Shown one piece after another: positions 3,718 through 43,517 of a stretch of DNA of 64,000 nucleotides (the first letter of the stretch is position 1; each line of letters opens with the position of its first letter). The DNA lies in IMG/VR virus record IMGVR_UViG_3300050821_013430, positions 248,001-312,000 of that record. The stretch is one strand, 5' to 3'. Made by a program: the position numbers and the translations under genes. Under the pieces are notes generated by a model, which saw only the letters and a program-made list of their open reading frames with translations, was not told the DNA's origin and did not search any database.

Positions 3718-3997
3718 GATAGGTGTCTTTCTTGGGATGTAATAGTGAGGTGAAAATGGTGCGCTTCCAGCCACATGCAGGACAACAGGCTGTTTTGATC
3801 AGTCGTGAAGGTTTCCACGGTGTGTCGCATTGAAAATTGAACCACATTCTATGAAGAGGCTGCAAACAAGCATCTACTTGTTCTTGCCATGCCTGTTGTT
3901 CTTGTTCGGAAGAAGAAAGCCAGTCTTTGGAAAAATCGAAACCTTGCCAAGTTCGGAACTCATTCCAAAGGCCATCTTGTAAAGTGCTGTTATTCAT
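3704..3997 (-). CDS. hypothetical protein with CPACG motif
   Basis: 3' part of track ORF; the upstream extension overlaps a + strand gene. Confidence 0.55.
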   Translation of the reverse strand: MNNSTLQDGLWNEFRTWQGFDFSKDWLSSSEQEQQAWQEQVDACLQPLHRMWFNFQCDTPWKPSRLIKTACCPACGWKRTIFTSLLHPKKDTYHDHQ

Positions 3998-7055: not shown

Positions 7056-7159
7056 TGTCTTTCTCTTTCTTACTCAGAGCGATCTATCGGACTCGAACCG
7101 ATGGTGATGTCTGCTTGGAAGGCAGATGCAGTCGCCGCTGTGCCAAGATCGCCTATATC

Positions 7160-9631: not shown

Positions 9632-10585
9632 ATGACGACACTCGCTCCTTATCCTTGCGTTTTTGGCTCGTTGGTGGATTATCCAACATCATCAGTTCAG
9701 GTGCTCTATAATCCGAGCAATTATCCACGCACTAATTTCCTTGGTGGTAGCGGATCGGTCTGGTCATATAACGGAACAGCCTGGACACAGTTTGCTGGTT
9801 CTGGCCCCGCTGGAACAATCCCGAGCGATCGCACTGGTCAAACAATGTCCCAGGACGGTACGAACTTGGTTCTCTTCGGAGGTGAAGGAACTATCGCCTA
9901 TCTCGGAGACACTTGGAAAGGAACCAACTCTTCTTGGAGCCAAAGCACTGCAACTTGGTTTGGTACTGCTCCGTATCCCCGTACTAACTGCCAAACAACT
10001 TACCTCTCAGGGACACCAACGGTCGTCTTATTCGGAGGCGCTTCTCAATCTTTCGTCAATCAAGAAACCTGGACTTGGACGTCTTCTAACGGCTATTGGA
10101 CTAACCTTGGTCTTGCCAGCACGGCGCAACCTCCTTGGCGACAATATGCCTGCTTCGCGGCCGATCCAACTCACGCCATCTTATTTGGAGGACAAGGCAA
10201 TGGCAATCAGGTCTTTCAGGATACCTGGCAATTTTCAGGTGGTCTATGGAGTGATTTGAACACCATCAATACTCCCTCAGCCAGATGGGGAGCGTCCTTC
10301 GTCTATGACAGTACCAACAGCCTTTTCACTATGTTTGGAGGGTGTCAGATCAGCAATAGCGTTCCGCTCAACGAAACTTGGGTATTCAATCTGGGTACAT
10401 TGACCTGGACTAACTTGTCCGCTGGACTAACCAATGCCCCAAGTGCTCGATATGGCGCCTCGGCTTGCTGGGATAGTACGCATCACAAGATGTTGCTCTT
10501 CTCTGGTGCAAACCAAGATGGATTACTACCGGACTTTTGGACATTCTCAGGTGGGCTTGCAGGGACTTGGGTACAGGTCTTCTAA
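9632..10585 (+). CDS. Kelch-repeat beta-propeller protein
   Basis: Repeated VLFGG...DTW...W...PSAR.GA units. Confidence 0.88.
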   Translation: MTTLAPYPCVFGSLVDYPTSSVQVLYNPSNYPRTNFLGGSGSVWSYNGTAWTQFAGSGPAGTIPSDRTGQTMSQDGTNLVLFGGEGTIAYLGDTWKGTNSSWSQSTATWFGTAPYPRTNCQTTYLSGTPTVVLFGGASQSFVNQETWTWTSSNGYWTNLGLASTAQPPWRQYACFAADPTHAILFGGQGNGNQVFQDTWQFSGGLWSDLNTINTPSARWGASFVYDSTNSLFTMFGGCQISNSVPLNETWVFNLGTLTWTNLSAGLTNAPSARYGASACWDSTHHKMLLFSGANQDGLLPDFWTFSGGLAGTWVQVF

Positions 10586-10917: not shown

Positions 10918-11256
10918 TCACCAACACTCATCCAGCACCTCTTCTACATTGACTTCCTTGTAATCCCAGGCCCGTTGCACCCAATTTGGAAGCCTATCCC
11001 ACTCATCGCCATGAATAGTGAGGGTATTGGTAGGAGCAATCGCCATAGCCAACTTCTTGCCATCAAAACTACCCCAATAGAAGATGTAGCAATAGTCTTT
11101 GCCAGTTAGTCGAGCGGCAATTAGGGCATCCACCAATTCCTTGCCAGTATATGGGGAAGGGTATAGGAGTTGTTTCTCTCGGTTAGGATAGTAGCCATTG
11201 TAGATGGCCCCGATTTCACCTTGACCATTGATGCGAATGAAGAAAGGGGTCACCAC
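10918..11256 (-). CDS. hypothetical protein
   Basis: ORF coupled to rnhB. Confidence 0.65.
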   Translation of the reverse strand: MVTPFFIRINGQGEIGAIYNGYYPNREKQLLYPSPYTGKELVDALIAARLTGKDYCYIFYWGSFDGKKLAMAIAPTNTLTIHGDEWDRLPNWVQRAWDYKEVNVEEVLDECW

Positions 11257-11903
11257 TTCACCATACTCTTTACTGGCTCGTACGAAACCCGATGCAAAGG
11301 CGTTGCTCCATATTTCTTCAACGCGGCCTTATGGTCTTTTGTCCCATATCCCGAATTTTCGGCCCATCGATACTCAGGATGTAATTGTCCCCAAATTGCC
11401 ATCCTTCCATCTCGATAGCATTTGGCCAGAATTGAGGCTGCCATCACCTGGGGAACGAAGTTATCGGCCTTGGGCAACCATCTGACATCGGTCATATTGG
11501 CGGGAGGCTCTCCCTTGGGTCGTGCTCCGTCTATAATGAGATATGAAGAGGTTTTGAGGTCGGTTTGGGCCTTGGCTACCATCGTACCAATCGCCTCGCT
11601 AAACGCCTCTGAGAGGCATTGAGTAATACCGTAATGGTCAATATGGAGATTAGAGCGCTCTGCAATGGCAAAGCCTATCTCTCTCCGTTCATATGCGGCT
11701 CCGATAATTGCTCGCATTTCTTCTCGACGCTTCTTGGAAAGAGCCTTGCTATCGTTGAGACCCTCTAATGTCCAGGATTTAGGGGCAAGAATGGCACAAC
11801 AAACACACGGGCCTGCAAGTGCGCCCGTACCGACATCATCCGCCCCTATCACCCAATCCTGAGTAATATGACTAAGTTCTTCTTCCCATCGTTTATCCAT
11901 CAT
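11250..11903 (-). CDS. rnhB: ribonuclease HII
   Basis: IGADDVGTGALAGP, LNDSKAL, IIDG, KADN...MAASILAKCYRD, GYGT..H...GATPLHRVSY. Confidence 0.92.
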   Translation of the reverse strand: MMDKRWEEELSHITQDWVIGADDVGTGALAGPCVCCAILAPKSWTLEGLNDSKALSKKRREEMRAIIGAAYERREIGFAIAERSNLHIDHYGITQCLSEAFSEAIGTMVAKAQTDLKTSSYLIIDGARPKGEPPANMTDVRWLPKADNFVPQVMAASILAKCYRDGRMAIWGQLHPEYRWAENSGYGTKDHKAALKKYGATPLHRVSYEPVKSMVKW

Positions 11904-12100
11904 CGGTGATCCAATCCGCATTGTTGACAGCAGCCAGAAAGACCTGAGCCGTTGCAAACGGGACAAGTTCGGGCTCCGACATTCTCAGGTTCGTTGTAAT
12001 CGAGATATTGCTCCTGACCTTCACCACCACAATTGGAACAGGCGCCAGGCGGAAAAATGGTCTCGCTCTTTTCGATCAATTTCCAATCGAAGTCTCTCAA
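11900..12100 (-). CDS. CPQCG-tag family variant (DnaJ-like CxxCxGxG body)
   Basis: CSNCGGEG...CPVCNGSG...CQQCGLDHR*; probable TTG start overlapping the upstream stop. Confidence 0.6.
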   Translation of the reverse strand: MRDFDWKLIEKSETIFPPGACSNCGGEGQEQYLDYNEPENVGARTCPVCNGSGLSGCCQQCGLDHR

Positions 12101-13733: not shown

Positions 13734-14015
13734 TTAGCCTAACCGATAGGAAGATACCTTGCCACGCTCAATAAAGAGATTGACCCGCCCCGTCTTGATA
13801 TCATCGGTTAGTAATCGAGTGTCCCCATCTTCTTGGGCAAGACGCCATTCACGTTTGTTGGTTTCTAAGGTGGTGATGGCCGCTTCCTTGGTCATTCCGA
13901 CGATGGAAGTGAGTTGGAATCCCTTGACCGAAACCGTATCAGGCTCCACATCTCGTATCTCGGTATGAATTTCAGAGAGTTGTTCGGGAGTAATCTTCTT
14001 GTCAGTAGTATCCAT
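13734..14015 (-). CDS. possible I78/potato-inhibitor-like protease inhibitor
   Basis: IVGMTKEAA...WRL...DG...[19 protein letters not shown]...LG resembles the T-x-D-x-R-x-x-R-x-N pattern. Confidence 0.5.
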
Positions 14016-14076
14016 TTTGTCTTCTTTCTTATTATTTTATTTGAAATGTCAAATAACTTCCGATATATATGTATAT

Positions 14077-15078
14077 ATGAAACTATTTGAACAGTTTGAG
14101 TTGTTATGTGTTCCAGAGCCTAATAGTGGATGTTGGTTATGGGCCGATGAAATGGATTCCAGAAACCAATATGGCATATTTAGAGTTGGCGGTATTCCGT
14201 TTGGAGCCCATCGTATCGCGTTTGAGTTATACAAAGGGCAGATACCAGCAGGACTGCAAATATGTCATAGTTGCGATGTTATGGCTTGCGTCAATCCAGA
14301 ACATTTATGGCTTGGAACAAAAGAGGATAATGCTCTCGATGCCGCTGCAAAAGGCATTTTAGCCAAAAGAACAAAGAAATCAAACAATGTAATTTGTAAT
14401 TATTCCCAAAATAATATAAAATTCATCCAACCCACTTACCAATATAATCAGATCACTTTTATTGAAAGATTTCTCTCATCTTTTGATGAAACGAATAACT
14501 GTTGGAATTGGAAATCAGAATTGAATTATGCTGGTTATGGCATCATACGAATTGGGAAAACGCAGATACTTGCTCATAGGCTTAGTTTTCAACTATTGAA
14601 AGACGATCTTACTAAGGGATTATTTATTTGTCATTCTTGCGATAATAGGAAATGTATCAATCCAAAACATTTATGGTTAGGAACTCAGAAAGAGAATATG
14701 GCTGATGCAAAAGCAAAAGGAAGAATGAATCGCGGAGAAAATAATTGGAGCGCCAAACTAAATGAAAATGATATTAGAAATATTTTTGATATGTATCATA
14801 ATGGATATAGAACTGCTGAAATAGCACAAAAATATGATTTAGATCAGAGTTATGTTTCTCATATATTGAGAGGGTTGGTCTGGAATCATATTGATACACC
14901 AAAAATCAAATCAACAAGAACAAATAATGTCAGTAATAAATTGACACAAAATCAAATTGACGAGATCAATATACTGCGTCCAACAATGACAATAACCGAA
15001 TTGGCCAATAAATTTGTTATTTCTCGAACCACCATACAACGAGTATTATCAGGTAAATTGACGGGGCGAAGAAAGTAA
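14077..15078 (+). CDS. free-standing homing endonuclease, two HNH domains plus HTH tail
   Basis: Two CW.W...YG...AHR...ICHSCDN..C.NP.HLWLGT...N units; AT-rich; opposite strand to neighbours. Confidence 0.88.
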
Positions 15079-16765: not shown

Positions 16766-17881
16766 TTATAGGTGTTGGGCGCAGTAGCCACCATCGGCAT
16801 TGACCCACTGTTCTTGAATCAACCAATCCAATCCATCCAAGTGTTGATTGGCGGGACTACCATTGGCACTTGAATAAGTGGTGGCATATATCCAACTACA
16901 TTCATCACTTTCCTCCTCAAATCCTGTCCAAGACTCCGATGTTGGATCGGTCGTTGCCTCACTCAATTCGTGGAAGATGATGCTCGCCATACTATCAGAC
17001 GAGAAGTCTCCGTTAGGGGTTGGCAATGCGGCATCATACCCACCAGCATCTTCCAACAAGGCCCACTCATCACATAGACCGGGACATTGGATCGGATCGC
17101 CCACAAAGGCGATCTTGATGGTGTCATTACCGAAGGGATAGAAACTATGGTAGCCGCAGTATATCGAACACTCATTACCTTCCACAACATCCTTAGATGT
17201 CAGGACGAAGTATACCCCATTAGTATCGACCGGCAAACTCTTGTCAGTAAGGTGGCTGGATACGATGTCCCAGATGTTGTTGCCTTGTAAATTGGCGCCA
17301 AGTGAATAGAGATCATTGACAGACTGCACCAATTGGACTTTGCCGCTGACATAACTGGGATACCAAAACGGCGGGGGCGATTCATCAATACCAGCATCAC
17401 CATAGACAATGGTGCCGCAGTGATCAAACTGATAACCTACTGGGCCACCATCGGTTCCTATCCCGTCTAACTGATAGTAGCCGGTGTTGATATCAAGTAT
17501 GGGTGAGGCATTCAATCCGACAATCAGATCGTTGACTAACCCTGGTGCTTTGGGCGCGTATGACCAATCTCCGTACCAGATCAGATAGACATTGACAGTA
17601 TTGAGGATGACTGGCCCACCACCATAAGGAAGCCCATTGTCAGGGACGGATACCGAAACACAGCCCGAAGTGTCAGGCTGAAAACCAGCATCGCTATCAT
17701 CACCGTCCGTGAAAGATGGATAGCCATCGGAAAAGGGACGCCCTACATCAGGACTACTGGTATCGTGAGAAGCATCTACAATAACCATCCCACCATCTAA
17801 TGCGGTGGTATCGTCACCCATGCAGGCGATGAAAAGGAGAGGGCAGATCGAGAATAGGACAAAGAGCCAACGCTTGTTCAT
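16766..17881 (-). CDS. lipoprotein with Phi-1/EXORDIUM-like domain
   Basis: Lipobox-like LFIAC; GGPV...VYLIWYG.W, YFVLTS.DV, YCGYH, SIIFHELSEATTDP, DECSW. Confidence 0.72.
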   Translation of the reverse strand: MNKRWLFVLFSICPLLFIACMGDDTTALDGGMVIVDASHDTSSPDVGRPFSDGYPSFTDGDDSDAGFQPDTSGCVSVSVPDNGLPYGGGPVILNTVNVYLIWYGDWSYAPKAPGLVNDLIVGLNASPILDINTGYYQLDGIGTDGGPVGYQFDHCGTIVYGDAGIDESPPPFWYPSYVSGKVQLVQSVNDLYSLGANLQGNNIWDIVSSHLTDKSLPVDTNGVYFVLTSKDVVEGNECSIYCGYHSFYPFGNDTIKIAFVGDPIQCPGLCDEWALLEDAGGYDAALPTPNGDFSSDSMASIIFHELSEATTDPTSESWTGFEEESDECSWIYATTYSSANGSPANQHLDGLDWLIQEQWVNADGGYCAQHL

Positions 17882-18167: not shown

Positions 18168-18716
18168 TTACTTTGAGTCTTGTACGACGGGGCCCATCTC
18201 AGCCCAGTCCTTATCTGCTAATCGGTAATTCGAGTACTGCTTCTCTTCGGTGACCTCTTTGGTAATCTCTAACCAAGGCGGTAATTCGACCTTCTGTTGC
18301 TTACTCTCTAATTCCAATTCCAGGATGATCATCCCTTTTCGTTTGGGAAAGATATCCAACTCGAAATCCTGACCATTGTAGTCGAAGGTATAACGGACTT
18401 TGCTTATCGGGTCTTTCTTAGGATCGGCTCGTTCCAAGAACTTATCGTACTGTTCTTTGGTGATTTGGTTCTCGACCTCCCGATTGACACCGTTTTCAAT
18501 CAGGGTCTTCTTAGTATGCCAATAGGTCTTGTTGGTACCGAAGAAATCGTGGCTGACTTCTCGTACTCGTTCAGTGTCCTTGTCGGTAGAAGACTTCATA
18601 TAGGATTGGGAGATGTACTCGATATCTTTGGCATTAGAGACGATATGCTCGATGGCCTCTATCGAAAGAGGGTGCTCGACGCGCCATCTTCTTTCTATTT
18701 CCAATTCGTCAGTCAT
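18168..18716 (-). CDS. CYTH-domain protein (triphosphatase/adenylate cyclase-like)
   Basis: ELEIERRW, ISQSY, RVR, KVR..F..ELDIF, ELELE, YSNYRLA. Confidence 0.88.
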   Translation of the reverse strand: MTDELEIERRWRVEHPLSIEAIEHIVSNAKDIEYISQSYMKSSTDKDTERVREVSHDFFGTNKTYWHTKKTLIENGVNREVENQITKEQYDKFLERADPKKDPISKVRYTFDYNGQDFELDIFPKRKGMIILELELESKQQKVELPPWLEITKEVTEEKQYSNYRLADKDWAEMGPVVQDSK

Positions 18717-19285
18717 TTCCAATTATTGCCATAGATGATGTCTTTGATACAACTTACGGAAACACCATATTTCCGTGCTAAGGTGGTACAAGCACCATAT
18801 TTTGGCCGCTTGATATGATTTGGCATCCAATACGCATCATACTCTTTCCGAATATTTGCTACTTGAACATCAGTAAGAATGGCGCGGCCGTTTTTGCTTC
18901 CACTTTGAGAAATGGACATTTTTTCCAACGTTTCGTTAGTATGTTTCGTGCCCCTTCTCGAAAAACCAAACTCTAATAAATTATAGCCGTTGTCAATGCT
19001 GTCAAATTTTTTGATGAAGAAGTTTTCCCAGTAATCGGCTATTTCTTGCGTATGGCATATCATCAAACAATGGATGAAAAAATTGTCTTTGCCATACTTA
19101 GCGATGGCTCTGGCTATCTTGACACAATGGTTATGCGGGCCTATCCGACAATGAGACATAAATCGAAACTGTAAATTCTTCCAAGTCTGCCCCACATATA
19201 CCTTGTCATTGACCGTATTTCGGATCACATAAATAAAACAATGGGTCGTTTGATTTTCGGCTAAACTTCTTGGGCAATACACCAT
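18713..19285 (-). CDS. GIY-YIG homing endonuclease with NUMOD3/HTH
   Basis: FIYVIRNTVNDKVYVGQT...RF..H...GYN; KHTNETLEKMS; AT-rich. Confidence 0.88.
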   Translation of the reverse strand: MVYCPRSLAENQTTHCFIYVIRNTVNDKVYVGQTWKNLQFRFMSHCRIGPHNHCVKIARAIAKYGKDNFFIHCLMICHTQEIADYWENFFIKKFDSIDNGYNLLEFGFSRRGTKHTNETLEKMSISQSGSKNGRAILTDVQVANIRKEYDAYWMPNHIKRPKYGACTTLARKYGVSVSCIKDIIYGNNWK

Positions 19286-21232: not shown

Positions 21233-21517
21233 CTAATTGAGGAGAGTGGCGCTAAACTCACGATTGATGGCGTCCAAAACTTCGGAATATCCCGCCTTCT
21301 CATCTGGGTCGGTCGTCGTCATCAATTGGTTTCTAATCATCCCCGTATAGAGTTCAACGACTTTTTGGTCGCCCACGGCATCAGCCGCAATTGTCAGTAA
21401 TTTGGATAGGGTTTGGGTGGCCTCTTTGGTTTCCGACCAATCTCTTTCAGGAGAGAGGGTTTCGGCTTTTTTGACGAGGCCGAAGAGGACTTTGACAAGG
21501 CGGTCGAGATCAGTCAT
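21233..21517 (-). CDS. hypothetical protein
   Basis: ORF. Confidence 0.65.
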   Translation of the reverse strand: MTDLDRLVKVLFGLVKKAETLSPERDWSETKEATQTLSKLLTIAADAVGDQKVVELYTGMIRNQLMTTTDPDEKAGYSEVLDAINREFSATLLN

Positions 21518-22112
21518 TCGTTGGGTCTATATCGCCGCTTTCGGAGATCAATTCGCCATATTTGGTGAGGAGGTAATCTGCCATTGCCACTACTTTGTCG
21601 CGACGGTAATACTTGGATTTTGGGGGTTTAGGGACGGGAAGTTTTTCGCGGAGGCCTAATTGGACTTGGCGAGCATAACGGCCCGCGCATTCTCTACCAC
21701 AAAAGGCGGAGACCTTTCCTTTGCTGGACTTGTCTCTAATCAAGCGAGGGCTACGCTCAAACTTCTTCTTGCACATCGGACATTTGAGTTTGACCATTTT
21801 GACCCTGCGAGTATCAGATGCTGAATGTTCGGAGCGAGGAAGTAATTGGAGGTTTTCCATTCGATTATCATTCCTATCACGATTGATATGATCGACTGTC
21901 ATCTCGGCAGGAATATCACCGTGATGCTGCTGATAGAGCCAACGAGCCTCTGACATTGTTTTTCGAGTGCCATCAGGCCAGAGAAGGATGACAAAACTAC
22001 GATCGGCTTTGTTGCGATACGGCCCGAACACTTTTGGCTTCTTTTTTGCCGTAGCAATAAGTTCGTAGAGTTCCGCAAATTCGGAAAGATCGCTATACTT
22101 TTCCACACCCAT
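21510..22112 (-). CDS. HNH endonuclease with zinc-finger extension
   Basis: TVDHINRDRNDNRMENLQLL...EHS; CPMC...FCGREC. Confidence 0.85.
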   Translation of the reverse strand: MGVEKYSDLSEFAELYELIATAKKKPKVFGPYRNKADRSFVILLWPDGTRKTMSEARWLYQQHHGDIPAEMTVDHINRDRNDNRMENLQLLPRSEHSASDTRRVKMVKLKCPMCKKKFERSPRLIRDKSSKGKVSAFCGRECAGRYARQVQLGLREKLPVPKPPKSKYYRRDKVVAMADYLLTKYGELISESGDIDPTND

Positions 22113-22167: not shown

Positions 22168-23346
22168 ATGAAACTCAATGAATACGCTAAGACCTTAGGT
22201 ATCAGTTATAGTGCAGCACGAGATCGTTATTACGGAGGGAAGATAGATGGCGCCTATCAAGATATCAAGGGTAGAAGCCTGCTTATCAATACTGGCGATT
22301 ATGACAATGATCTAATCCAGTGCGGCAAATATCGATACAACTTGGGAACACTTACCAGAGAAGACGCCAACTCATTCTACATCCTCGGCGCATTCATCAC
22401 CGATGGTAATATCATCTCCAACAATGGATGTAGTTGGCAATGCGAAATCAAGTCAATAGACTATGATTGGTTAGAGTTGATGGCATCAAAATTGGGGCCG
22501 GACTTGAAACTACATCCGACACATAATAGGTGTAAGAGGATACGGTTATTCAGCCGAGAAATCGGAGATTGGTTCATCGCTCATAACTGCACGCCTAACA
22601 AGTCGATGACAGTAAAGATGCCTAATGTCCCGTCGCAATATCTACCAGACTTCATTAGAGGAGTAATTGATGGTGATGGAACACTAACCATACCACCCAA
22701 TAGAAGTGATAGGGCTTCGTGCCATGTATCCATAACGACTGCGAGTATCGATTTCGCAATGTCAATGCGGCAGGCGATTTCTAATACCTATGGAGTGTAT
22801 GTTGGCCTAACTCTTCCCAAAATGCGAGACTGTATGATAGATGGACATCCAGTGATAGCGCGAAACCAATTATACACAATAGGGGTAAGTGGGGAGGGGT
22901 GCCGAAAACTACTTGAAAAGGTGTATTTCCCTGGTCATGAAATGGCGCTCAAAAGAAAAGCCGCTCTTGCCTTGAAAATCATCGCCAGACAAGAACAAAT
23001 CGCTTTGCAAGCGGCAGAGCGAAAAACTTACTACCTCAGGTCAGACGGAAGCAAATTCTTTTGGCCACCGATAGAAAATTTGGTCTCAATGATCAATGAG
23101 AGTGGTGTTGAAAATCTCGGCAAGGAATTGAACATCGGCCCACAAGCCATTAGAAGGCAAATCAAGAAGTTTGGGATGGAAGACAAAATCAAGAAGTGGA
23201 AAACACCCAAAAGAGTATTACTACCATTCTCAAAAGAGGAGATTATCGACTTGCTCAAAACGCACAACTATGTTCAGATCGCTAAAATGGCTAACACATC
23301 AACAACTACGCTTCGGCAAAAGATGAAAGAGATGGGATTACCTTAG
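22168..23346 (+). CDS. free-standing LAGLIDADG homing endonuclease with N- and C-terminal HTH
   Basis: FYILGAFITDG and DFIRGVIDGDG; N-terminal MKLNEYAKTLGISY. Confidence 0.85.
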   Translation: MKLNEYAKTLGISYSAARDRYYGGKIDGAYQDIKGRSLLINTGDYDNDLIQCGKYRYNLGTLTREDANSFYILGAFITDGNIISNNGCSWQCEIKSIDYDWLELMASKLGPDLKLHPTHNRCKRIRLFSREIGDWFIAHNCTPNKSMTVKMPNVPSQYLPDFIRGVIDGDGTLTIPPNRSDRASCHVSITTASIDFAMSMRQAISNTYGVYVGLTLPKMRDCMIDGHPVIARNQLYTIGVSGEGCRKLLEKVYFPGHEMALKRKAALALKIIARQEQIALQAAERKTYYLRSDGSKFFWPPIENLVSMINESGVENLGKELNIGPQAIRRQIKKFGMEDKIKKWKTPKRVLLPFSKEEIIDLLKTHNYVQIAKMANTSTTTLRQKMKEMGLP

Positions 23347-26977: not shown

Positions 26978-27226
26978 CTATTTTGCTCCTAAACTACTTT
27001 GGGATTGAACTGTTGCCGCATAGGCTCGTTCGCCTTCGGCTGTAATCTGATACTCACGCATTAGGGTAAAACGGATGAAACGCTGCGCTTCAAGGGCCTG
27101 TAAATCCTGTGCGGCGTGCTTACTGATCTGCAAAACGGCTCTGATGTTGTTCTTGTTTCGATTGTGCTTCTGAATCTGAATGAGGGAGGAGAGGATTTTC
27201 CGTTGGGGGTCAGTCAATTCAGTCAT
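26978..27226 (-). CDS. possible winged-helix protein
   Basis: LTDPQRKIL...LQALEAQRFI...YQITAEGE. Confidence 0.55.
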   Translation of the reverse strand: MTELTDPQRKILSSLIQIQKHNRNKNNIRAVLQISKHAAQDLQALEAQRFIRFTLMREYQITAEGERAYAATVQSQSSLGAK

Positions 27227-27260: not shown

Positions 27261-27342
27261 TGGTGCTCTCCCCAGGATTCACACCTGGATTATTCCGGGC
27301 TTTTGAGGGCCCGGTGCCGTTAGTAATTACGGCCAGAAGAGC
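27261..27342 (-). tRNA. tRNA-like gene, atypical (8-nt anticodon loop CCTCAAAA, T-loop TGTGAAT)
   Basis: 7-bp acceptor GCTCTTC/GGAGAGC plus ACCA; D stem GCCG/CGGC; T stem CCAGG/CCTGG. Confidence 0.7.
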
Positions 27343-27344
27343 AT

Positions 27345-27426
27345 TGGTGCCACCGCCCCGCCTTTCACAGGGATCATTCACGGGTTTTCAAGGCCCGAGC
27401 GTTCTGAGTTATTGAACTACAATGGC
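27345..27426 (-). tRNA. tRNA-like gene, atypical (TGA-centred loop, T-loop TGAAAGG, no long variable arm)
   Basis: Acceptor GCCATTG/CGGTGGC plus ACCA; D stem GTTC/GAAC; anticodon stem CGGG/CCCG. Confidence 0.68.
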
Positions 27427-27427
27427 G

Positions 27428-27503
27428 TGGTGCAAGGGGCTGGATTCGATACCAGCATCTTCCCACCGCGGGGGCGGGATGATCTCTGTTGATCTACCCT
27501 TGC
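27428..27503 (-). tRNA. tRNA-like gene, atypical (loop CCCCGCG, T-loop TATCGAAT)
   Basis: Perfect acceptor GCAAGGG/CCCTTGC plus ACCA; D stem GATC/GATC; T stem GCTGG/CCAGC; 76 nt. Confidence 0.72.
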
Positions 27504-27526
27504 GTGAGGTATAATCTAAACCACCC

Positions 27527-27862
27527 TCATTGGGGTGTCAAGGGGCTTTCGTTTTCTCCGAATTTGAGGAAGCCTCCGCCCTCAATCTCAGACCCAGATC
27601 GGGGATCGGGGGTGCCCGTTTTCTCGACTTCAATTGTCTCGGTTTTGGGAACGAGGGCATCGAGCGTGGCCAGCCAGCGCATCGGTCGATAATCATCGGT
27701 AATATGGCGACACTTCCCCTTATGCAGCCATATTTTGGTGCAGGGTTTCCCACCATCGTAATGCCACACCGAATGAGGTACAATATTCGTGCATCGTTTG
27801 TAGGTATAACGAGCGCGAAGTGCTTGTATCTCTTCGGCGCTAAACGGCTTGATGTCAGTCAT
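27527..27862 (-). CDS. hypothetical protein
   Basis: Coupled ORF; C...LHKGKCRH motif. Confidence 0.6.
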   Translation of the reverse strand: MTDIKPFSAEEIQALRARYTYKRCTNIVPHSVWHYDGGKPCTKIWLHKGKCRHITDDYRPMRWLATLDALVPKTETIEVEKTGTPDPRSGSEIEGGGFLKFGENESPLTPQ

Positions 27863-28017
27863 TGGTCATCCTTCTCTGGTACGGTCTTGTTCTCTTCGGC
27901 TATTCTCTTCTTCATCTTGCGTCTGATTGACCACGGGGACAACGGACAATTGAGCAGGTGATATCTGGGTTTTCTCTCTGGCCAAAAGGGTTTGCAAATG
28001 CAATCGTCCGTGTTCAT
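27859..28017 (-). CDS. small hypothetical protein
   Basis: ATGA coupled; CIC...HLLNC. Confidence 0.55.
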   Translation of the reverse strand: MNTDDCICKPFWPERKPRYHLLNCPLSPWSIRRKMKKRIAEENKTVPEKDDQ

Positions 28018-28268
28018 TGAACATCCTTGTAAGCCAGTTTCTCTTTGGCGGAGAGTGATTTTAGGTGTGCTTCCAAACGCTGCGCCTCGCTTCGGGTCGA
28101 ACGAATAAACGACCTGATGCATCTGACAGGTCGTCTGCCGCGAGTATAGCGGGCACCACGGGAAGTGTTGTTGTGTTCGTGCAGACGCCGGTCGAGATTG
28201 TTGGTGATCCCCGTATATAGAGTATCATCGGAACAACGCAGTATATAGACAAAAAAGGGCTGTTCCAT
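28014..28268 (-). CDS. small GIY-YIG nuclease (YhbQ/UPF0213-like)
   Basis: FVYILRCSDDTLYTGITNNLDRRLHEHN...ARYTRGRRP...SEAQRLEAHLKSL. Confidence 0.9.
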   Translation of the reverse strand: MEQPFFVYILRCSDDTLYTGITNNLDRRLHEHNNTSRGARYTRGRRPVRCIRSFIRSTRSEAQRLEAHLKSLSAKEKLAYKDVQ

Positions 28269-28271
28269 TGA

Positions 28272-29246
28272 TTATTCCTGAGGAAACAATTGCTCTTTGC
28301 AGCGCTTTATAGCCCTGAAAATAGTGCTCTTGGTAGCACTATATTTAGTTGCCAGTTCTTTCATAGTGATATTGCCAGCCATATATTCTCGATAGATTTC
28401 CATCTCGATTTCGGGCGAGAATTTCATTCTGGCTTTGCCAATTTTCTTTTTATGCTCCTCAGATTTGGGCCTGCCTCTCCCGGCTATAGACATTTTTTGT
28501 CTCGCTTCTTGCGAGACAATTTTACCGGTATTGGCTATCGATAGTTTTTGTCTCGTCTCTGGCGAGACGGGGCGCCTCGCGTTGGATATTGCGATTTTCT
28601 GTTTCGTCTCATCACTATGTTTTCGGCCAGTACTGGCGATTGACATTTTCCGCCTTGTTTCTTCCGATGGAGTTTTTCCGAAGTTGGGATTTCTGTTGCC
28701 CTTCTTGGTCTCTGCGATTTTCTGACGGGTTTCTTCTGAAAGGGGCCCATTCGATTTGCCCTTCCTTATCTTGCTTATTTTGCTTATTTTCTTTCTTGTC
28801 TCCCCTGAAACTGACTTTCCTTTATTGCCTTCACCAATTTTTCGTTTATGCTCTTCTGATTTTGGCCTGCCTTTTGCGGCTTTTGACAATTTTTGTCTTG
28901 TCTCTTCCGTATGTTTCCTACCTTTTCCGCCTCCCTTACCTATATAATGAGGATCGTTGTATAGTTCGGCGCCAATCAACTTGAAATAGCCATACCAAAA
29001 TTCCTCTGCATCAGGAAGTTCGGAAGTAGTTGCGTATTCTTCGATCACTTCCATTACAGGTTTTAGTCTTTGTTTTTTGAGCCCGCCGATCCAAATACAT
29101 TTCTGTTTGGTGCCCTCTTTATTTTGACAATGGGCTTCGTATCTTCTTTCTTGGTTAGAAGTGTATCCTATGTAGTGCAAGCATTTGCTGATAGGATCGA
29201 ACAGGCCATAAATTACATTGGGCCCGTCAGGTGCAGTAATGTTCAT
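28272..29246 (-). CDS. GIY-YIG homing endonuclease with tandem NUMOD3 repeats
   Basis: VIYGL...HYIGYT...RRY..H; many H/S-EETRQK(I/M)S...GR/K repeats; C-terminal HTH. Confidence 0.88.
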   Translation of the reverse strand: MNITAPDGPNVIYGLFDPISKCLHYIGYTSNQERRYEAHCQNKEGTKQKCIWIGGLKKQRLKPVMEVIEEYATTSELPDAEEFWYGYFKLIGAELYNDPHYIGKGGGKGRKHTEETRQKLSKAAKGRPKSEEHKRKIGEGNKGKSVSGETRKKISKISKIRKGKSNGPLSEETRQKIAETKKGNRNPNFGKTPSEETRRKMSIASTGRKHSDETKQKIAISNARRPVSPETRQKLSIANTGKIVSQEARQKMSIAGRGRPKSEEHKKKIGKARMKFSPEIEMEIYREYMAGNITMKELATKYSATKSTIFRAIKRCKEQLFPQE

Positions 29247-32045: not shown

Positions 32046-32663
32046 GTGCAGTTGAAAAGGCTTTTCGCGGCTGTTGTTTGCGGCATCGCTCTTTGCGTAG
32101 GGTGCGCCCCCCAGTTTCAACTCAATAAGTCGAATTACGCAGAGAACGACACCATCTACACCGTATGGCACGTCGACACACGGTTTTCCACAAGGGAACG
32201 AGCGGCTATCTTTCAGGCCACTCAGGAGTGGCAGCAATTCGCCCGAGGTAAGGTAGAGATCAGTTTGATCTTCGACTTGGACTATTCAGATCCTTCCATT
32301 CTTCGAGATGAGCGTCTGTTGATCTATTCCTCATCCAAATCCAGAGCGATAAGCCAGGCTGATAAGGAAGTCAAAAGGGATGACCCTGATGCTTACACAC
32401 TTGGGCTATTCGAGAAAGATGGGGTGCTCGGGACGCCAACGATATCGATCGCAATGGATCGGATCTGGTCGGAACGGATGTTGAAATCAGTTGTTCAACA
32501 CGAGTTGGGGCATAGTTTGGGGCTGGCACACACGAAAGGCATCGGAGTAATGAACGCGATGGCGGGATGCCATTGTCTCACGCTTGCGGATGCGGAAGAC
32601 TTCTGCGGCGTGTATGGCTGCAAACCAGCAGACCTCAATTACTGCGATCCGAGCGCTCCCTAA
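32046..32663 (+). CDS. matrixin-like zinc metalloprotease, probable lipoprotein
   Basis: HELGHSLGLAH plus Met-turn (GVM); LCVGC lipobox-like; start approximate. Confidence 0.8.
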   Translation: MQLKRLFAAVVCGIALCVGCAPQFQLNKSNYAENDTIYTVWHVDTRFSTRERAAIFQATQEWQQFARGKVEISLIFDLDYSDPSILRDERLLIYSSSKSRAISQADKEVKRDDPDAYTLGLFEKDGVLGTPTISIAMDRIWSERMLKSVVQHELGHSLGLAHTKGIGVMNAMAGCHCLTLADAEDFCGVYGCKPADLNYCDPSAP

Positions 32664-33493
32664 TACTCTAAGCATTGGAAAGTAGTCGCAAACTTCATCC
32701 AAGCATCGGGAGTGATGAGCGACTTGAAACCCATTCTCTCAAACTCTTTCCTGAGTTGGTGGAAATTGGTTTGTCCCTCTTCCACAATCAGATCATCCAA
32801 AGGGATAGACCTCAATTCAATTAGGTAGCGATTGATGGCGAAGTTGGCTCGGTTTTCTTCGATTGACATCCATTGCTCGAAGAGAGTAGGATTGGCCAGC
32901 ATTTTGAGAGCGGTCTTTTTGCCTACTAAGGAAGGTATGTTATCAGCCGTATCGCCATAAAGGGATTTCCCCGCCACCACCGGATGAGACGGGGGTTTGA
33001 CGAAGACCTTTTTGATGGGGTTGTAGATTTTGACCTGATGTCCCAATTGGGGGACTTGGAGCAGATCACTATCGTTGCTAACGACGGTTAGATCTTCCCC
33101 TTGGAGGTTTTCCACCAGTGTGAGCACTACATCATCCGCTTCCGAAGCGTCATGACGGACGCGAGTAATCGGAAGGTGCTGGACGGAATTGAGTGCTTCG
33201 TTCTTGGACAAGCGGAAACGATCTACTTCCTTTTGCGTCTTGGAAGCGATCTTGACTAAGCGATTGGCTTTGTAGCCGGGGTAAGCGTCTCTACGAAACT
33301 GAGGATCTCCTTCGAGAACAAGGAAGCATTTATGGGGTTGAAACTGCTCAATGAGAAGTCGAAGACTACGGAAGAAATTGAACACTGCCACATAGCGAGT
33401 ATCGATCGGATTCAATTCGTCAGGTTTAGACTTGAAAGCGACCTGCGCGCGCCATAAGAGGTTGTAAGTATCGAGGATAAGTATGCGATCCAC
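32660..33493 (-). CDS. 5'-3' exonuclease / flap endonuclease (T4 RNase H/Pol I 5' domain-like)
   Basis: ILILDTYNLLWRA, YPGYKANR, EADDVV, SNDSDLLQ, GDTADNIP..VGKKTA. Confidence 0.92.
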   Translation of the reverse strand: MDRILILDTYNLLWRAQVAFKSKPDELNPIDTRYVAVFNFFRSLRLLIEQFQPHKCFLVLEGDPQFRRDAYPGYKANRLVKIASKTQKEVDRFRLSKNEALNSVQHLPITRVRHDASEADDVVLTLVENLQGEDLTVVSNDSDLLQVPQLGHQVKIYNPIKKVFVKPPSHPVVAGKSLYGDTADNIPSLVGKKTALKMLANPTLFEQWMSIEENRANFAINRYLIELRSIPLDDLIVEEGQTNFHQLRKEFERMGFKSLITPDAWMKFATTFQCLEY

Positions 33494-42715: not shown

Positions 42716-42966
42716 GATGCCACCTCTTCCTTCTTGGGAGAGTGTTGTATGACCAGTTTGGCGCGCTGCTTCTTAGCACCAAGACCAACGCCGAGTCTGC
42801 TATCCAACAGAGCGATCTTCTGCTCGGTAGAAAGCCCGGCAAAGAACGCCTGACGCTCGATGGCTTCCTCACGCTTGTGTTTCTTGTTGTCCGGACGACG
42901 ACCATTGCAACCAGGATTACGACGCTGACGAATATGCTTACCGCGTTTCGATACGAGAGGTTCCAT
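42712..42966 (-). CDS. basic hypothetical protein
   Basis: Coupled ORF. Confidence 0.6.
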   Translation of the reverse strand: MEPLVSKRGKHIRQRRNPGCNGRRPDNKKHKREEAIERQAFFAGLSTEQKIALLDSRLGVGLGAKKQRAKLVIQHSPKKEEVAS

Positions 42967-43517
42967 TATTGTCTTCCTTGTTTGAGTGAATATGCAAACA
43001 GAGCCGCAGCACTTGCAGCCCCAACATTGATTGATCGAACAGAGCCGCGCATTGATATCTCTACCAGATGATCCAGCAACGCCAATATCTCAGGCTGCAA
43101 ACCGTCCTTCTCTTCGCCAAAGCATAACAGCGGTTTCTCGGGCCATTGGAAGTCTTGCAGTGGCGTAGTTCCGTTGATATTGTTCTCCAATCCGACGAAG
43201 GCATATCGCTCTTTCAGAGCGGACACGGCTTCGATAGAAGGAAGATGGATGACATCAGTATATCGGTAGGTGCCTTGTGCGGCTCTGCGATCCCAGTGTC
43301 TTCGACCATAGTAATAGACCGCTTCGGCTCCAAAGGCATTAGCGTTCCTGACCAAGCAACCGAAGTTGAAGTCGTGTTCGATCTGAGCCATCAATACTGC
43401 GCAAGGCAGCGCTTTGGCTTTCAGATCAGCCTTGATCTCTTCGGTGCTTAGTGCCCTATAGCAGTCTCGGACATTGCGTTGCCAGAGGAAGCGCTCATCG
43501 TACTTCTGCTCTTCCAT
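42966..43517 (-). CDS. TrmH/SpoU-family RNA 2'-O-methyltransferase
   Basis: HDFNFGCLVRNANAFG, LCFGEEKDGL, VEISMRGSVRSINVGAASA. Confidence 0.9.
   Translation of the reverse strand: MEEQKYDERFLWQRNVRDCYRALSTEEIKADLKAKALPCAVLMAQIEHDFNFGCLVRNANAFGAEAVYYYGRRHWDRRAAQGTYRYTDVIHLPSIEAVSALKERYAFVGLENNINGTTPLQDFQWPEKPLLCFGEEKDGLQPEILALLDHLVEISMRGSVRSINVGAASAAALFAYSLKQGRQ

What the first reader, a model, noticed from the sequence alone, without database searches (positions are those of the whole stretch)
27261..27503. Three tandem CCA-ended tRNA-like genes, each with a broken anticodon loop and T loop
Seen: three cloverleaves separated by only 2 and 1 nt. All begin with GC, end in GC-ACCA, and have intact acceptor, D and T stems. 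None has the canonical TTCRA T loop (TGTGAAT, TGAAAGG, TATCGAAT). Anticodon arms are extended to about 6 bp, with loops CCTCAAAA (8 nt), C-CTTGAAA-A (TGA-centred, C-A mismatch) and CCCCGCG (no U33, no purine 37). The Leu/Ser-like anticodons lack the long variable arm those tRNAs normally have. Compensated stems with non-canonical loops argue against random decay. Inference: tRNA mimics, such as decoys for anticodon nucleases or uncharged-tRNA sensors, non-ribosomal aminoacyl donors, or frameshift/quadruplet suppressors. The TrmH methyltransferase, deaminase and nucleotidyltransferase-like genes in this window could act on them.
Basis: partly seen in the sequence, partly recalled or inferred. 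Interest (0 to 1): 0.72.

Follow-up and report, generated by a model that had tools for sequence, protein, structure and literature searches.

The report
Three remodelled tRNA-like genes in phage
A 473-kb soil phage carries, where a relative keeps its main tRNA cluster, three back-to-back CCA-ended cloverleaf genes whose stems have been kept by selection while the loops a normal tRNA needs are altered, so they look like working non-standard tRNAs or tRNA mimics rather than plain decay; their function is unproven.

Summary
On the minus strand lie three cloverleaves: tL1 27503-27428, tL2 27426-27345 and tL3 27342-27261. They are separated by 1 and 2 nt, and each ends in an encoded ACCA. All three keep U8, G53, T54, A58 and C61. 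All lack the G18G19/Psi55-C56 elbow pair set and have 6-7-bp anticodon stems.

With lax filters the Rfam tRNA model scores tL1 at 41.2 bits, tL3 at 29.2 and tL2 at 25.5 (threshold 29).

The array sits at the position syntenic with the main tRNA cluster of a 433-kb relative. A sigma-70-like promoter ends 10 nt upstream. A Seg-type GIY-YIG homing endonuclease gene lies upstream.

tL2 and tL3 are paralogs. They differ by 8 fully compensated base pairs and no broken ones in the acceptor, D and T stems, while their unusual loops are conserved. That argues for selection on RNA structure, not neutral decay.

No homolog was found outside this phage, and no RNA data were available.

Best reading (about 0.4): expressed, tRNA-processed, non-standard tRNAs or mimics tied to phage-host conflict over tRNAs. 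Rivals are odd but genuine decoders, pseudogene relics, endonuclease-immune alleles, and processing signals.

Novelty: a new variant of a known kind. Interest is moderate.

The parts
27513..27541 (-). Sigma-70-like promoter: TTGACA (27541-27536), 17-nt spacer, TAGATT (27518-27513). It ends 10 nt upstream of tL1, so the predicted transcript starts only 2-4 nt before tL1's G+1.
   Evidence: 10 of 12 consensus matches. This is a consensus match only, and expression is not shown. The phage's five canonical tRNAs have no such site and follow directly after ORF stops.
27428..27503 (-). tL1: 76-nt Arg(CCG)-type tRNA-like gene. It has a 7/4/6/5-bp cloverleaf, D loop AACAGA (no G18), anticodon loop CCCCGCG (C33, C37; folds as 7 bp + 5 nt), T loop UAUCGAAU (the canonical loop plus 1 nt), and A73-CCA encoded.
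   Evidence: Rfam tRNA model 41.2 bits. Its best pairwise match is the phage's own tRNA-Arg(UCU).
27345..27426 (-). tL2: 82-nt Ser(UGA)-type tRNA-like gene and paralog of tL3. It has a normal 7-nt loop CUUGAAA on an extended stem that carries U.U and C.A mismatches. D loop AAUAACUCA, variable region AAUGAU, T loop UGAAAGG, A73-CCA encoded.
   Evidence: 46.6 bits with the tL3 model; 25.5 bits, below threshold.
27261..27342 (-). tL3: 82-nt Leu(CAA)-type tRNA-like gene on a class-I body. It has a 6-bp anticodon stem and an 8-nt loop C+CUCAAAA. That 7-mer is identical to the loop of the phage's canonical tRNA-Leu(CAA). D loop UAAUUACUAA, variable region AAUAAU, T loop UGUGAAU, A73-CCA encoded.
   Evidence: (29.2 bits).
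26978..27226 (-). 82-aa ORF that starts 34 nt after tL3's CCA. It is the first of a run of small same-strand ORFs, probably co-transcribed, which would make the array the 5' leader of that unit.
   Evidence: No Pfam or PHROG family. No relative in viral contigs.
27527..27862 (-). 111-aa ORF immediately upstream, function unknown. Its stop codon overlaps the promoter-like site.
   Evidence: No family. Only itself among 5.8 billion proteins.
28014..28268 (-). 84-aa stand-alone GIY-YIG domain gene. Its homolog in relative G002 lies just upstream of that phage's tRNA cluster and serves as the synteny anchor.
   Evidence: GIY-YIG, 1e-17. (49% identity to G002 399754-399981).
28272..29246 (-). 324-aa Seg-type homing endonuclease (GIY-YIG + NUMOD3 repeats + C-terminal HTH), 770 bp upstream of the array. 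It is absent from relatives G002, G003 and G004.
   Evidence: phrog_314, homing endonuclease; SegD-like hits; no homolog in G002-G004.

Best explanation
The locus holds three tRNA-derived small-RNA genes, not random hairpins and not freshly dead tRNA genes.

**Shown**
- Each folds into a 7/4/6-7/5 cloverleaf with an encoded A73-CCA.
- Together they occupy the slot where the nearest large relative keeps its main tRNA cluster.
- tL1 is a lightly remodelled Arg(CCG)-type tRNA.
- tL2 and tL3 are an old duplicate pair. Their stems diverged only through compensated changes. Their unusual D loop, variable region and anticodon arm stayed alike, so selection has acted on the RNA fold and on those loops.

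**Inferred**
- Host RNA polymerase starts at the sigma-70-like promoter a few nt before tL1.
- RNase P cuts at each G+1. The 1-2-nt spacers and the 3' trailer are trimmed back to the encoded CCA. This releases three stable tRNA-shaped RNAs and the mRNA of the small-ORF unit behind them.
- All three lack the G18G19-Psi55C56 elbow lock and have anticodon helices 1-2 bp too long. tL1 has no U33 and tL3 has an 8-nt loop. They are therefore poor candidates for ordinary ribosomal decoding.

**Most likely role**
They serve as non-standard tRNAs or tRNA mimics in the contest between phage and host over tRNAs. They present an acceptor/CCA end and an Arg-, Ser- or Leu-type anticodon stem-loop to host tRNA-binding factors. 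They would act either as stand-ins that host tRNA-directed nucleases do not recognise, or as decoys that occupy such nucleases. The phage also carries an Rnl1-type RNA ligase, a CCA-adding-type enzyme, a SpoU methylase and EF-Ts, which fits a tRNA-centred conflict.
For: - Cloverleaves and CCA ends.
- tRNA ancestry: Rfam tRNA model gives 41.2, 29.2 and 25.5 bits.
- Locus homology: window 11250-42966 is collinear with G002 430451-379644. The array falls where G002 has more than 20 CCA-ended tRNAs at 401161-407805, behind the same GIY-YIG gene.
- Paralogy of tL2 and tL3: 46.6 bits, against 13-28 bits for unrelated tRNAs.
- Compensation: 8 double changes, 1 single change and 0 broken in 16 pairs. 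About 9 broken pairs are expected under random substitution, and the probability of none is about 5e-6.
- The conserved segments are not contiguous. The D loop and anticodon arm are conserved while the D-stem strand between them has diverged. A single gene-conversion tract therefore cannot explain the pattern.
- tL1 and tL3 have no stem mismatch at all, although the positions most conserved in tRNAs are altered.
- Promoter-like site.
- The anticodon loops copy real ones. tL3's CUCAAAA equals the loop of the phage's own tRNA-Leu(CAA).
- tRNA-repair and tRNA-handling genes in the genome.
- Elbow-less tRNAs with a 6-bp anticodon stem can be functional, as tRNAPyl and mitochondrial tRNAs show (PMC7609411).
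- Phage tRNAs are known to counter tRNA-cleaving defences (PMC10264068, PMC11464382, PMC11555353; abstracts listed).
Against: - There is no expression or processing evidence. No RNA run was listed.
- No homolog exists outside this one phage strain, so the only comparative signal is between the two paralogs.
- tL2 is thermodynamically weak and has two mismatches in its anticodon stem, as a decaying copy would.
- Selection in the past does not prove function today.
- No cognate host nuclease or host organism is known.
- No phage aminoacyl-tRNA synthetase of the Ile/Leu/Val, Ser/Thr/Pro or Arg classes was found, and no EF-Tu.
- CGG, the codon tL1 would read, is the phage's rarest Arg codon, so there is no decoding demand to argue from.
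Confidence: 0.4

Rival explanations
1. They are genuine, if odd, decoding tRNAs reading CGG (Arg), UCA/UCG (Ser) and UUG (Leu). Host synthetases charge them and the ribosome uses them, much as elbow-less tRNAPyl or mitochondrial tRNAs are used. Their divergence makes them insensitive to host anticodon nucleases.
For: - tL2 has a textbook 7-nt loop (C32 U33 UGA A37 A38). tL3 keeps U33 and A37, with one extra 5' nucleotide.
- U33, A36, A37 and A38 are conserved between the paralogs, while positions 34 and 35 differ.
- tL1 passes the Rfam threshold.
- U8, G53, T54, A58, C61, A73 and CCA are kept in all three.
- Relatives carry other class-I-shaped tRNAs with Leu anticodons, and tRNAs with U56 and AU-rich D loops.
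- TTG is the phage's commonest Leu codon.
- tRNAPyl shows that such cores can work in bacteria (PMC7609411).
Against: - tL1 has C33 and C37, and its arm prefers a 7-bp stem with a 5-nt loop.
- All three anticodon helices are 1-2 bp too long, without the shortened connectors that compensate for this in tRNAPyl.
- From established identity rules, bacterial SerRS needs the long variable arm and LeuRS needs the G18G19 core. tL1 lacks A20, which ArgRS requires.
- The phage already has a canonical tRNA-Leu(CAA).
- No phage synthetase was found.
Confidence: 0.25
2. They are pseudogenes. On this view they are the last remnants of a once large tRNA cluster that was eroded in this lineage, for instance by repeated homing-endonuclease cuts and imprecise repair, and they have no present function.
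For: - They sit at the syntenic site of a tRNA cluster that has about 20 genes in G002, while this phage has only 5 canonical tRNAs in total.
- Seven homing-endonuclease genes lie between 578 and 29246 in the window, three of them within 10 kb upstream.
- The altered positions are exactly those whose loss inactivates a tRNA.
- tL2 shows mismatches and a weak fold.
- The array is an orphan with no conserved homolog anywhere.
Against: - tL1 and tL3 have 22 of 22 pairs intact.
- tL2 and tL3 differ by 8 compensated pairs and none broken, P about 5e-6, with non-canonical loops conserved between them.
- An extra anticodon-stem pair appears in all three.
- All three keep ACCA and precise 1-2-nt spacing, and a promoter-like site is retained.
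Confidence: 0.2
3. This is a DNA-level explanation for the T loops and is not exclusive of the others. The neighbouring Seg-type GIY-YIG endonuclease, like T4 SegB, would recognise the GGTTCRANTCC motif that encodes the T stem-loop. The three genes next to it would then survive because their T-loop DNA no longer matches the motif. The RNA oddities would be partly a by-product of that immunity.
For: - T4 SegB sits inside the T4 tRNA cluster, and its essential recognition element is GGTTCRANTCC (PMC2330249).
- A 324-aa Seg-like gene lies 770 bp upstream of the array.
- All three T loops break the motif in different ways: a 1-nt insertion in tL1 and substitutions in tL2 and tL3.
- G002, G003 and G004 lack this gene. 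G002 keeps canonical T loops at the syntenic cluster.
- T54A/A58U 'GATCG' T loops, which also break the motif while keeping the fold, recur in this phage clade.
Against: - The target of this particular enzyme is unknown. Seg-family enzymes have many different targets.
- Four canonical tRNAs elsewhere in the same genome keep the motif.
- It does not explain the loss of G18G19, the lengthened anticodon stems or the altered anticodon loops.
- The association rests on comparison with only three relatives, and only G002's syntenic locus was examined.
Confidence: 0.15
4. They are cis-acting tRNA-like punctuation. On this view only the acceptor/T minihelix matters. The elements recruit RNase P and 3' trimming to define and stabilise the 5' end of the downstream small-ORF mRNA, like the t-elements of plant mitochondria or the RNase P-matured C4 RNA of phages P1/P7 (both recalled from memory, not checked here).
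For: - The array is the first thing behind the promoter-like site and lies 34 nt before the next ORF.
- Stems are preserved while decoding nucleotides are not.
- T4 makes its tRNAs, the species I and II RNAs and segB mRNA from one processed transcript (PMC2330249).
Against: - One element would be enough; three with different anticodon arms are not needed.
- The D loop, variable region and anticodon arm are conserved between tL2 and tL3, which a pure minihelix signal would not require.
- The encoded CCA on every unit is typical of RNAs that are themselves the product.
Confidence: 0.1

Closest known systems
Phage-encoded tRNA gene clusters (T4, T5, jumbo phages), including the cluster of relative G002
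   Same: - Same genomic slot as G002's cluster, and same strand as the surrounding genes.
- Tight tandem spacing and encoded CCA.
- Homing endonuclease genes interspersed with the tRNA genes.
- Cloverleaf with U8, G53, T54, A58 and C61 (PMC2330249).
   Different: - No G18G19/Psi55C56 elbow.
- 6-7-bp anticodon stems.
- Loops of 5 or 8 nt in two of the three.
- Leu and Ser anticodons without the long variable arm.
- Two of the three sit at or below the Rfam threshold.
tRNAPyl and mammalian mitochondrial tRNAs (type I Ser-UCN; type II without D/T-loop interaction)
   Same: Lengthened (6-bp) anticodon stem together with absence of G18G19 and T-Psi-C, in RNAs that are nevertheless functional (PMC7609411).
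   Different: - The known examples compensate with a 1-nt connector, a 3-nt variable loop and a small D loop. tL1-3 have 2-nt connectors, 4-6-nt variable regions and 6-10-nt D loops.
- No CUA anticodon.
- No dedicated synthetase found in the phage.
Phage tRNAs that defeat tRNA-cleaving defences (T5 tRNA-Lys against PARIS; phage tRNA-Tyr against retron Eco7; anticodon-loop variants against anticodon nucleases)
   Same: Phage-borne tRNA genes whose anticodon stem-loops differ from the host's. The phage also carries an Rnl1-type ligase, as in T4's repair of nuclease-cut tRNA.
   Different: Those are otherwise canonical, chargeable, decoding tRNAs. Here the body is remodelled as well, and decoding is doubtful for tL1 and tL3. 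No defence system or host is known for this phage.
T4 species I and II RNAs, small stable RNAs encoded in the tRNA cluster
   Same: Non-tRNA stable RNAs that are co-transcribed and co-processed with phage tRNAs (PMC2330249). That their function is still unknown is recalled from memory, not checked here.
   Different: No sequence comparison was made here. The T4 species are not three tandem cloverleaves with anticodon-like loops.
Non-decoding tRNA look-alikes: murine gammaherpesvirus 68 vtRNAs, Staphylococcus non-proteinogenic tRNA-Gly, Bacillus cereus tRNA-Other
   Same: tRNA-shaped, tRNA-processed RNAs that are kept out of normal translation. vtRNAs are reported as not aminoacylated (PMC4337559, listed). 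NP tRNA-Gly has reduced affinity for EF-Tu and feeds Fem transferases (PMC12256121).
   Different: - vtRNAs are eukaryotic pol III products with CCA added afterwards.
- NP tRNA-Gly keeps a normal anticodon loop and is charged.
- tRNA-Other is recalled from memory, not checked here.

Membership tests
Canonical bacterial-type elongator tRNA (Rfam RF00005) | Covariance-model score at or above the gathering score of 29 bits | tested here: inconclusive
   tL1 scores 41.2 (passes), tL3 29.2 (borderline) and tL2 25.5 (fails). None is found with Rfam's default filters. The phage's accepted tRNAs score 38.7-57.8.
Canonical bacterial-type elongator tRNA (Rfam RF00005) | Cloverleaf with 7-bp acceptor, 3-4-bp D stem, 5-bp anticodon stem and 5-bp T stem | tested here: not met
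   Acceptor (7), D (4) and T (5) stems are met. The anticodon stems are 6 bp (7 when folded) in tL1, 7 positions with 2 mismatches in tL2, and 6 bp in tL3.
Canonical bacterial-type elongator tRNA (Rfam RF00005) | Elbow nucleotides G18, G19, Psi55 and C56 | tested here: not met
   No GG in any D loop. T loops are UAUCGAAU, UGAAAGG and UGUGAAU. Only tL1 could still form G19-C56 (alignment).
Canonical bacterial-type elongator tRNA (Rfam RF00005) | 7-nt anticodon loop with U33 and a purine at position 37 | tested here: inconclusive
   Met by tL2 (CUUGAAA). tL3 has 8 nt with U33 and A37 present. tL1 has C33 and C37, and a 5-nt loop in the minimum-free-energy fold.
Canonical bacterial-type elongator tRNA (Rfam RF00005) | Aminoacylation and use by the ribosome | not testable with these tools
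   No RNA run was listed. This needs acid-urea northern blots or charging assays.
Class II tRNA-Leu / tRNA-Ser | Long variable arm (10 nt or more, with a stem) | tested here: not met
   The variable regions are AAUGAU and AAUAAU, 6 nt each. The phage's real tRNA-Leu(CAA) has the long arm.
tRNAPyl-type / mitochondrial Ser(UCN)-type compact tRNA | 6-bp anticodon stem combined with a 1-nt acceptor-D connector, 3-nt variable loop and 4-5-nt D loop; CUA anticodon for Pyl | tested here: not met
   Only the long anticodon stem and the missing GG/T-Psi-C are shared. Connectors are 2 nt, variable regions 4-6 nt, D loops 6-10 nt, and anticodons CCG/UGA/CAA (features from PMC7609411).
Other curated RNA families (tmRNA, YrlA/Y RNA, T-box and others) | A match to any Rfam family other than tRNA | tested here: not met
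   Besides tRNA there was only a chance-level PYLIS_1 match on the opposite strand (12 bits, E 7.5). ARAGORN finds no tmRNA.
Phage counter-defence tRNAs (nuclease-insensitive isoacceptors) | A functional phage tRNA that restores decoding when a host nuclease destroys the host isoacceptor | not testable with these tools
   Host and defence system are unknown. The only context is an Rnl1-type ligase and a CCA-adding-type enzyme in the genome.
tRNA pseudogene | Neutral pattern of change: stems hit as often as loops, and no compensation | tested here: not met
   There are 0 mismatches in 44 paired positions for each of tL1 and tL3. Between tL2 and tL3 there are 8 compensated and 0 broken pairs, P about 5e-6. 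tL2 alone shows some decay-like features.

The most novel reading that the evidence does not exclude
The three RNAs would be a dedicated set of phage-made tRNA decoys. They would be processed to CCA-ended, elbow-less, long-armed cloverleaves that cannot enter translation. They would display Arg-, Ser- and Leu-type anticodon stem-loops that bind and neutralise host tRNA-directed immune nucleases or toxins. Alternatively they would serve as private acceptor RNAs for a phage enzyme. A fourth gene elsewhere in this genome (359398-359481) has its anticodon arm replaced by a tetraloop-capped helix, and would belong to the same strategy. This would be the first case of RNA decoys, rather than replacement tRNAs, used against tRNA-targeting defence.
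Probability: 0.15. Interest if true: 0.85.

Novelty: new variant of a known kind. Interest (0 to 1): 0.55.

Why it matters
Phage tRNA genes are now understood partly as weapons against host defences that cut tRNAs. Every studied case so far is an otherwise normal, decoding tRNA.

Here a huge soil phage has almost no ordinary tRNAs. At the old cluster site it keeps three tRNA-shaped genes whose fold is under selection while the decoding and elbow nucleotides are rewritten. If they are expressed, they would extend the repertoire from replacement tRNAs to remodelled or non-decoding tRNA mimics.

They would also supply natural examples of bacterial-world tRNAs that lack the D/T-loop lock and carry long anticodon arms, which is of interest for orthogonal tRNA engineering.

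The adjacency to a Seg-type endonuclease raises a further testable idea: homing endonucleases that target the T-loop motif may drive tRNA gene remodelling or loss in phages.

If they turn out to be relics, the locus is still a clean example of tRNA-cluster erosion.

Tried and rejected
1. **Alternative genetic code as the reason for odd tRNAs.** The standard code already gives 77% coverage by ORFs of at least 150 aa across the genome. Recoding any one stop codon only inflates ORF counts, and ARAGORN called no tRNA with a stop-codon-reading anticodon in this genome.

2. **Homologs through flanking proteins.** The 111-aa and 82-aa neighbours have no relatives in IMG/VR. The 111-aa protein has none among 5.8 billion proteins.

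3. **Homologs through relatives.**
   - Large terminase found 80 related contigs.
   - blastn of the array against 5 large relatives found nothing.
   - The tL3 model found nothing on 43 related records, although the tool's first-look filter is strict.
   - An unfiltered search of G002's syntenic 75 kb gave only generic tRNA scores.
   - Loci around homologs of the 5'-3' exonuclease held nothing.

4. **Pattern scans.**
   - The motif shared by tL2 and tL3 (variable region, T arm and CCA) gave 0 hits in viral contigs.
   - In metagenome contigs it found only an identical copy of the same phage plus chance hits.
   - The anticodon-arm motif found nothing cloverleaf-like.
   - tL1's T-stem-plus-acceptor pattern gave 45 hits in 185,579 species genomes, none of which looked like a tRNA gene on inspection. 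It gave 7 hits in viral contigs, one of them an unrelated tRNA-Tyr. tL1 is therefore not a recent capture of a known bacterial tRNA.

5. **Expression.** No RNA run was listed. DNA contigs from four metagenome runs (three soil, one seawater) covered parts of the 3-kb stretch. The two soil runs whose contigs overlap parts of the array show no differences there, so microdiversity gives no information.

6. **Shared phage promoter motif.** A motif shared between the array and the fourth odd tRNA gene is not enriched over shuffled sequence.

7. **D-loop/T-loop covariation between tL2 and tL3.** By eye, one candidate pair among eight is about what chance gives. I dropped it.

8. **Phage-encoded partners.** No class Ia, IIa or Arg synthetase, no EF-Tu, no RtcB, no CDA deaminase and no NTP_transf_2 enzyme was found.

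Full report
**Where the window lies.** The window is bases 248001-312000 of a 472,749-bp viral record that CheckV rates complete. It is a tailed phage: PHROGs recognises a portal protein, a large terminase and RIIA. It uses the standard genetic code. Nearly identical DNA turns up in several soil metagenomes.

On the minus strand the order is tL1 (27503-27428, 76 nt), one spacer base, tL2 (27426-27345, 82 nt), two spacer bases, tL3 (27342-27261, 82 nt). Each begins with GC and ends with GC-ACCA.
- Default ARAGORN reports only tL3, as Leu-CAA. With a lowered threshold it draws all three cloverleaves, as Arg-CCG, Ser-UGA and Leu-CAA.
- ViennaRNA gives the cloverleaf as the minimum-free-energy fold of each. 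The fold is very stable for tL1 (-35.3 kcal/mol, z -5.2) and tL3 (-37.7, z -4.2). It is weak for tL2 (-24.8, z -1.0).
- tL1 and tL3 have 22 of 22 stem positions paired. tL2 has two mismatches (U.U and C.A) in its anticodon stem and three G-U pairs.
In addition, all three keep U8, G53, T54, A58, C61 and A73. All three lack G18G19. All three have anticodon helices 1-2 bp longer than the universal 5 bp.

- The elements are less alien to tRNA models than they first seemed. Rfam's tRNA model missed them in the whole-window and 1.8-kb scans. On the 266-nt stretch, where the filters are laxer, it scores tL1 at 41.2 bits, tL3 at 29.2 and tL2 at 25.5, against a threshold of 29. The phage's accepted tRNAs score 38.7-57.8.
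- tL1's T loop is the canonical UUCGAAU with one inserted A, and a G19-C56 pair remains possible.
- tL1's anticodon arm prefers a 7-bp helix with a 5-nt loop.

**Context.**
- A sigma-70-like site (TTGACA, 17 nt, TAGATT) ends 10 nt before tL1. The phage's five canonical tRNAs have no such site and simply follow ORF stop codons.
- An 82-aa ORF starts 34 nt after tL3, followed by a run of small same-strand ORFs. The array therefore looks like the leader of a transcription unit.
- Upstream lie an orphan 111-aa ORF, an 84-aa GIY-YIG gene and a 324-aa Seg-type GIY-YIG/NUMOD3 homing endonuclease.
- Four more homing-endonuclease genes lie elsewhere in the first 23 kb of the window.

**Synteny.** The closest large relative is G002 (433 kb, 63% terminase identity). 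I fetched it whole.
- Window genes from 11250 to 42966 are collinear with G002 430451 to 379644.
- The array falls exactly where G002 has its main cluster of more than 20 canonical, mostly CCA-encoding tRNAs (401161-407805). That cluster lies just behind the homolog of the 84-aa GIY-YIG gene.
- The three elements are therefore positional counterparts of a tRNA cluster.
- None is an ortholog of any G002 tRNA. Pairwise and covariance-model scores are generic.
- This phage has only five canonical tRNAs in all.

**Evidence for selection.**
- A covariance model built from tL3 alone scores tL2 at 46.6 bits. tL1 scores 25.5, the window's tRNA-Gly 21.4, and G002's cluster tRNAs 13-28. tL2 and tL3 are therefore paralogs.
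- The 16 base pairs of their acceptor, D and T stems show 7 identical pairs, 1 one-sided change, 8 double compensatory changes and no broken pair.
- Seventeen random substitutions in those 32 nucleotides would break about 9 pairs. They leave none broken with probability about 5e-6.
- The non-canonical D loop (AAUWACUMA), the variable region (AAURAU) and the anticodon arm are conserved between the two.
- The conserved and diverged segments alternate. The D loop is conserved, the 3' strand of the D stem has diverged, and the anticodon arm is conserved. One gene-conversion tract cannot explain this.
- This is the signature of selection on an RNA fold whose unusual loops already existed at the time of duplication.
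- On the three-way structural alignment, 98.5% of pair cells are paired and 14 of 22 pairs show double changes. No shuffle reached either value (0 of 500), and slid-partner controls gave 38-52%. That part would also hold for three unrelated tRNAs, so I count it only as confirmation of the fold.

**No outside comparators.** Flank-protein searches, blastn, covariance-model searches on 43 related records, three motif scans of IMG/VR, one scan of JGI metagenomes and one of 185,579 species genomes gave only an identical copy of the same phage. No RNA run was listed. Expression, processing and charging therefore remain inferences.

**Can they decode?**
- tL2 has a normal loop (CUUGAAA). The extra C in tL3's loop lies 5' of U33, and its 7-mer CUCAAAA equals the loop of the phage's own tRNA-Leu(CAA).
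- tL1 has C33 and C37.
- All three have over-long anticodon helices without the shortened connectors that compensate for this in tRNAPyl or mitochondrial tRNA-Ser(UCN) (PMC7609411).
- Established identity rules (SerRS needs the long arm, LeuRS the G18G19 core, ArgRS A20) argue against charging by standard enzymes.
- The phage has no synthetase of the relevant classes and no EF-Tu.
- Codon usage gives no demand signal. CGG is the rarest Arg codon.
- Relatives do carry other deviant tRNAs. G002 403514-403588 and G004 331376-331451 have U56 and D loops without GG. G004 has 76-nt class-I tRNAs with Leu anticodons. Unusual but probably working tRNAs are thus a habit of this clade.

**The phage's tRNA toolkit.** The genome encodes an Rnl1-type RNA ligase, an Rnl2-type ligase, a CCA-adding-type nucleotidyltransferase, a SpoU-family methylase and an EF-Ts homolog. 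This fits a lifestyle in which tRNAs are contested. Published work shows that phage tRNAs counter anticodon nucleases, PARIS and retron Eco7. None of these genes is specifically tied to the array. The SpoU gene is also present in G002, which has no such array.

**A DNA-level lead.** T4 SegB is a GIY-YIG homing endonuclease located inside T4's tRNA cluster. Its essential recognition element is GGTTCRANTCC, the DNA of the T stem-loop (PMC2330249).
- The three genes next to this phage's Seg-like gene all break that motif, each in a different way.
- G002, G003 and G004 lack the gene. G002 keeps canonical T loops at the syntenic site.
- This could explain the T loops, and perhaps the erosion of the cluster. 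It does not explain the D-loop, anticodon-stem or anticodon-loop changes.
- The enzyme's real target is unknown.

**Verdict.** The elements are tRNA-derived genes kept under structural selection, probably transcribed from their own promoter and matured like tRNAs. They are too remodelled to be assumed ordinary decoders.
- I rate 'functional non-standard tRNAs or tRNA mimics in the phage-host tRNA conflict' at about 0.4.
- 'Genuine odd decoders' is at about 0.25 and 'relics' at about 0.2.
- Endonuclease immunity (about 0.15) and processing punctuation (about 0.1) are partial or overlapping alternatives.
- This is a new variant of a known kind (phage tRNA or tRNA-like genes) and is of moderate interest. 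It would be of high interest if the RNAs prove to be stable, uncharged decoys.

Noticed in passing
G000:C1:359398-359481 (minus strand; outside the window; held in L003): A fourth odd tRNA-like gene in the same phage. It scores 39.7 bits with the Rfam tRNA model and has canonical D and T arms. Its anticodon arm folds as a long interrupted helix capped by a GCAA tetraloop, so it has no anticodon loop, and no CCA is encoded. No homolog in G002-G004.
   Followed up: partly
window 2770-3774 (-): A full-length elongation factor Ts homolog (Pfam EF_TS, 2.5e-49) encoded by the phage. No EF-Tu gene is present in the genome.
   Followed up: partly
window 578-1135, 13999-15078, 18713-19285, 21510-22112, 22168-23346, 28014-28268, 28272-29246: A dense set of homing-endonuclease-type genes (HNH, GIY-YIG, LAGLIDADG, Seg-like GIY-YIG+NUMOD3) surrounds the former tRNA-cluster locus. 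The 324-aa Seg-like gene is absent from relatives G002-G004.
   Followed up: partly
G000:C1:345394-345482; G002 402169-402242, 406614-406689, 407560-407725, 22772-22846; G004 275392-275467: Recurrent T loops of the form GATCG..., an apparent T54A/A58U swap (judged by eye from the listed sequences) that would keep the reverse-Hoogsteen pair while changing the DNA motif GGTTCRANTCC. They occur in otherwise normal phage tRNAs of this clade.
   Followed up: no
G002 58637-58710; G004 303576-303651; G004 279976-280051 and 318040-318115: The relatives carry tRNA(CUA) genes of amber-suppressor type. G004 has 76-nt class-I-shaped tRNAs with Leu anticodons UAA and UAG on Arg-like bodies. This hints at stop-codon recoding or identity switching in related phages.
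   Followed up: no
window 42966-43517 (-): SpoU-family RNA 2'-O-methyltransferase, 183 aa, conserved in G002 (47% identity). Its subtype (TrmH, TrmL or TrmJ) was not resolved.
   Followed up: partly
G000:C1:201734-202441, 320147-320623, 131532-131927 (outside the window): An Rnl1-type RNA ligase, an Rnl2-type ligase and a short (251-aa ORF) CCA-adding/poly(A)-polymerase-family nucleotidyltransferase. Together these look like a possible tRNA repair kit.
   Followed up: no
window 9632-10585 (+), 16766-17881 (-), 46265-47260 (-): Domains unusual for a phage: Kelch repeats, a Phi_1/EXORDIUM-like region and an alliinase/aminotransferase-like C-terminal domain.
   Followed up: no
window 7077-7152 (-): A canonical tRNA-Gly(UCC) without encoded CCA (54.1 bits). 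It is the only standard tRNA in the window.
   Followed up: yes
window 11250-11966, 32660-33493, 53860-54522, 60426-61064 (all -): RNase HII, a 5'-3' exonuclease, a uracil-DNA glycosylase family protein and a dephospho-CoA kinase (CoaE, 2.6e-49). The last is an uncommon auxiliary metabolic gene.
   Followed up: no
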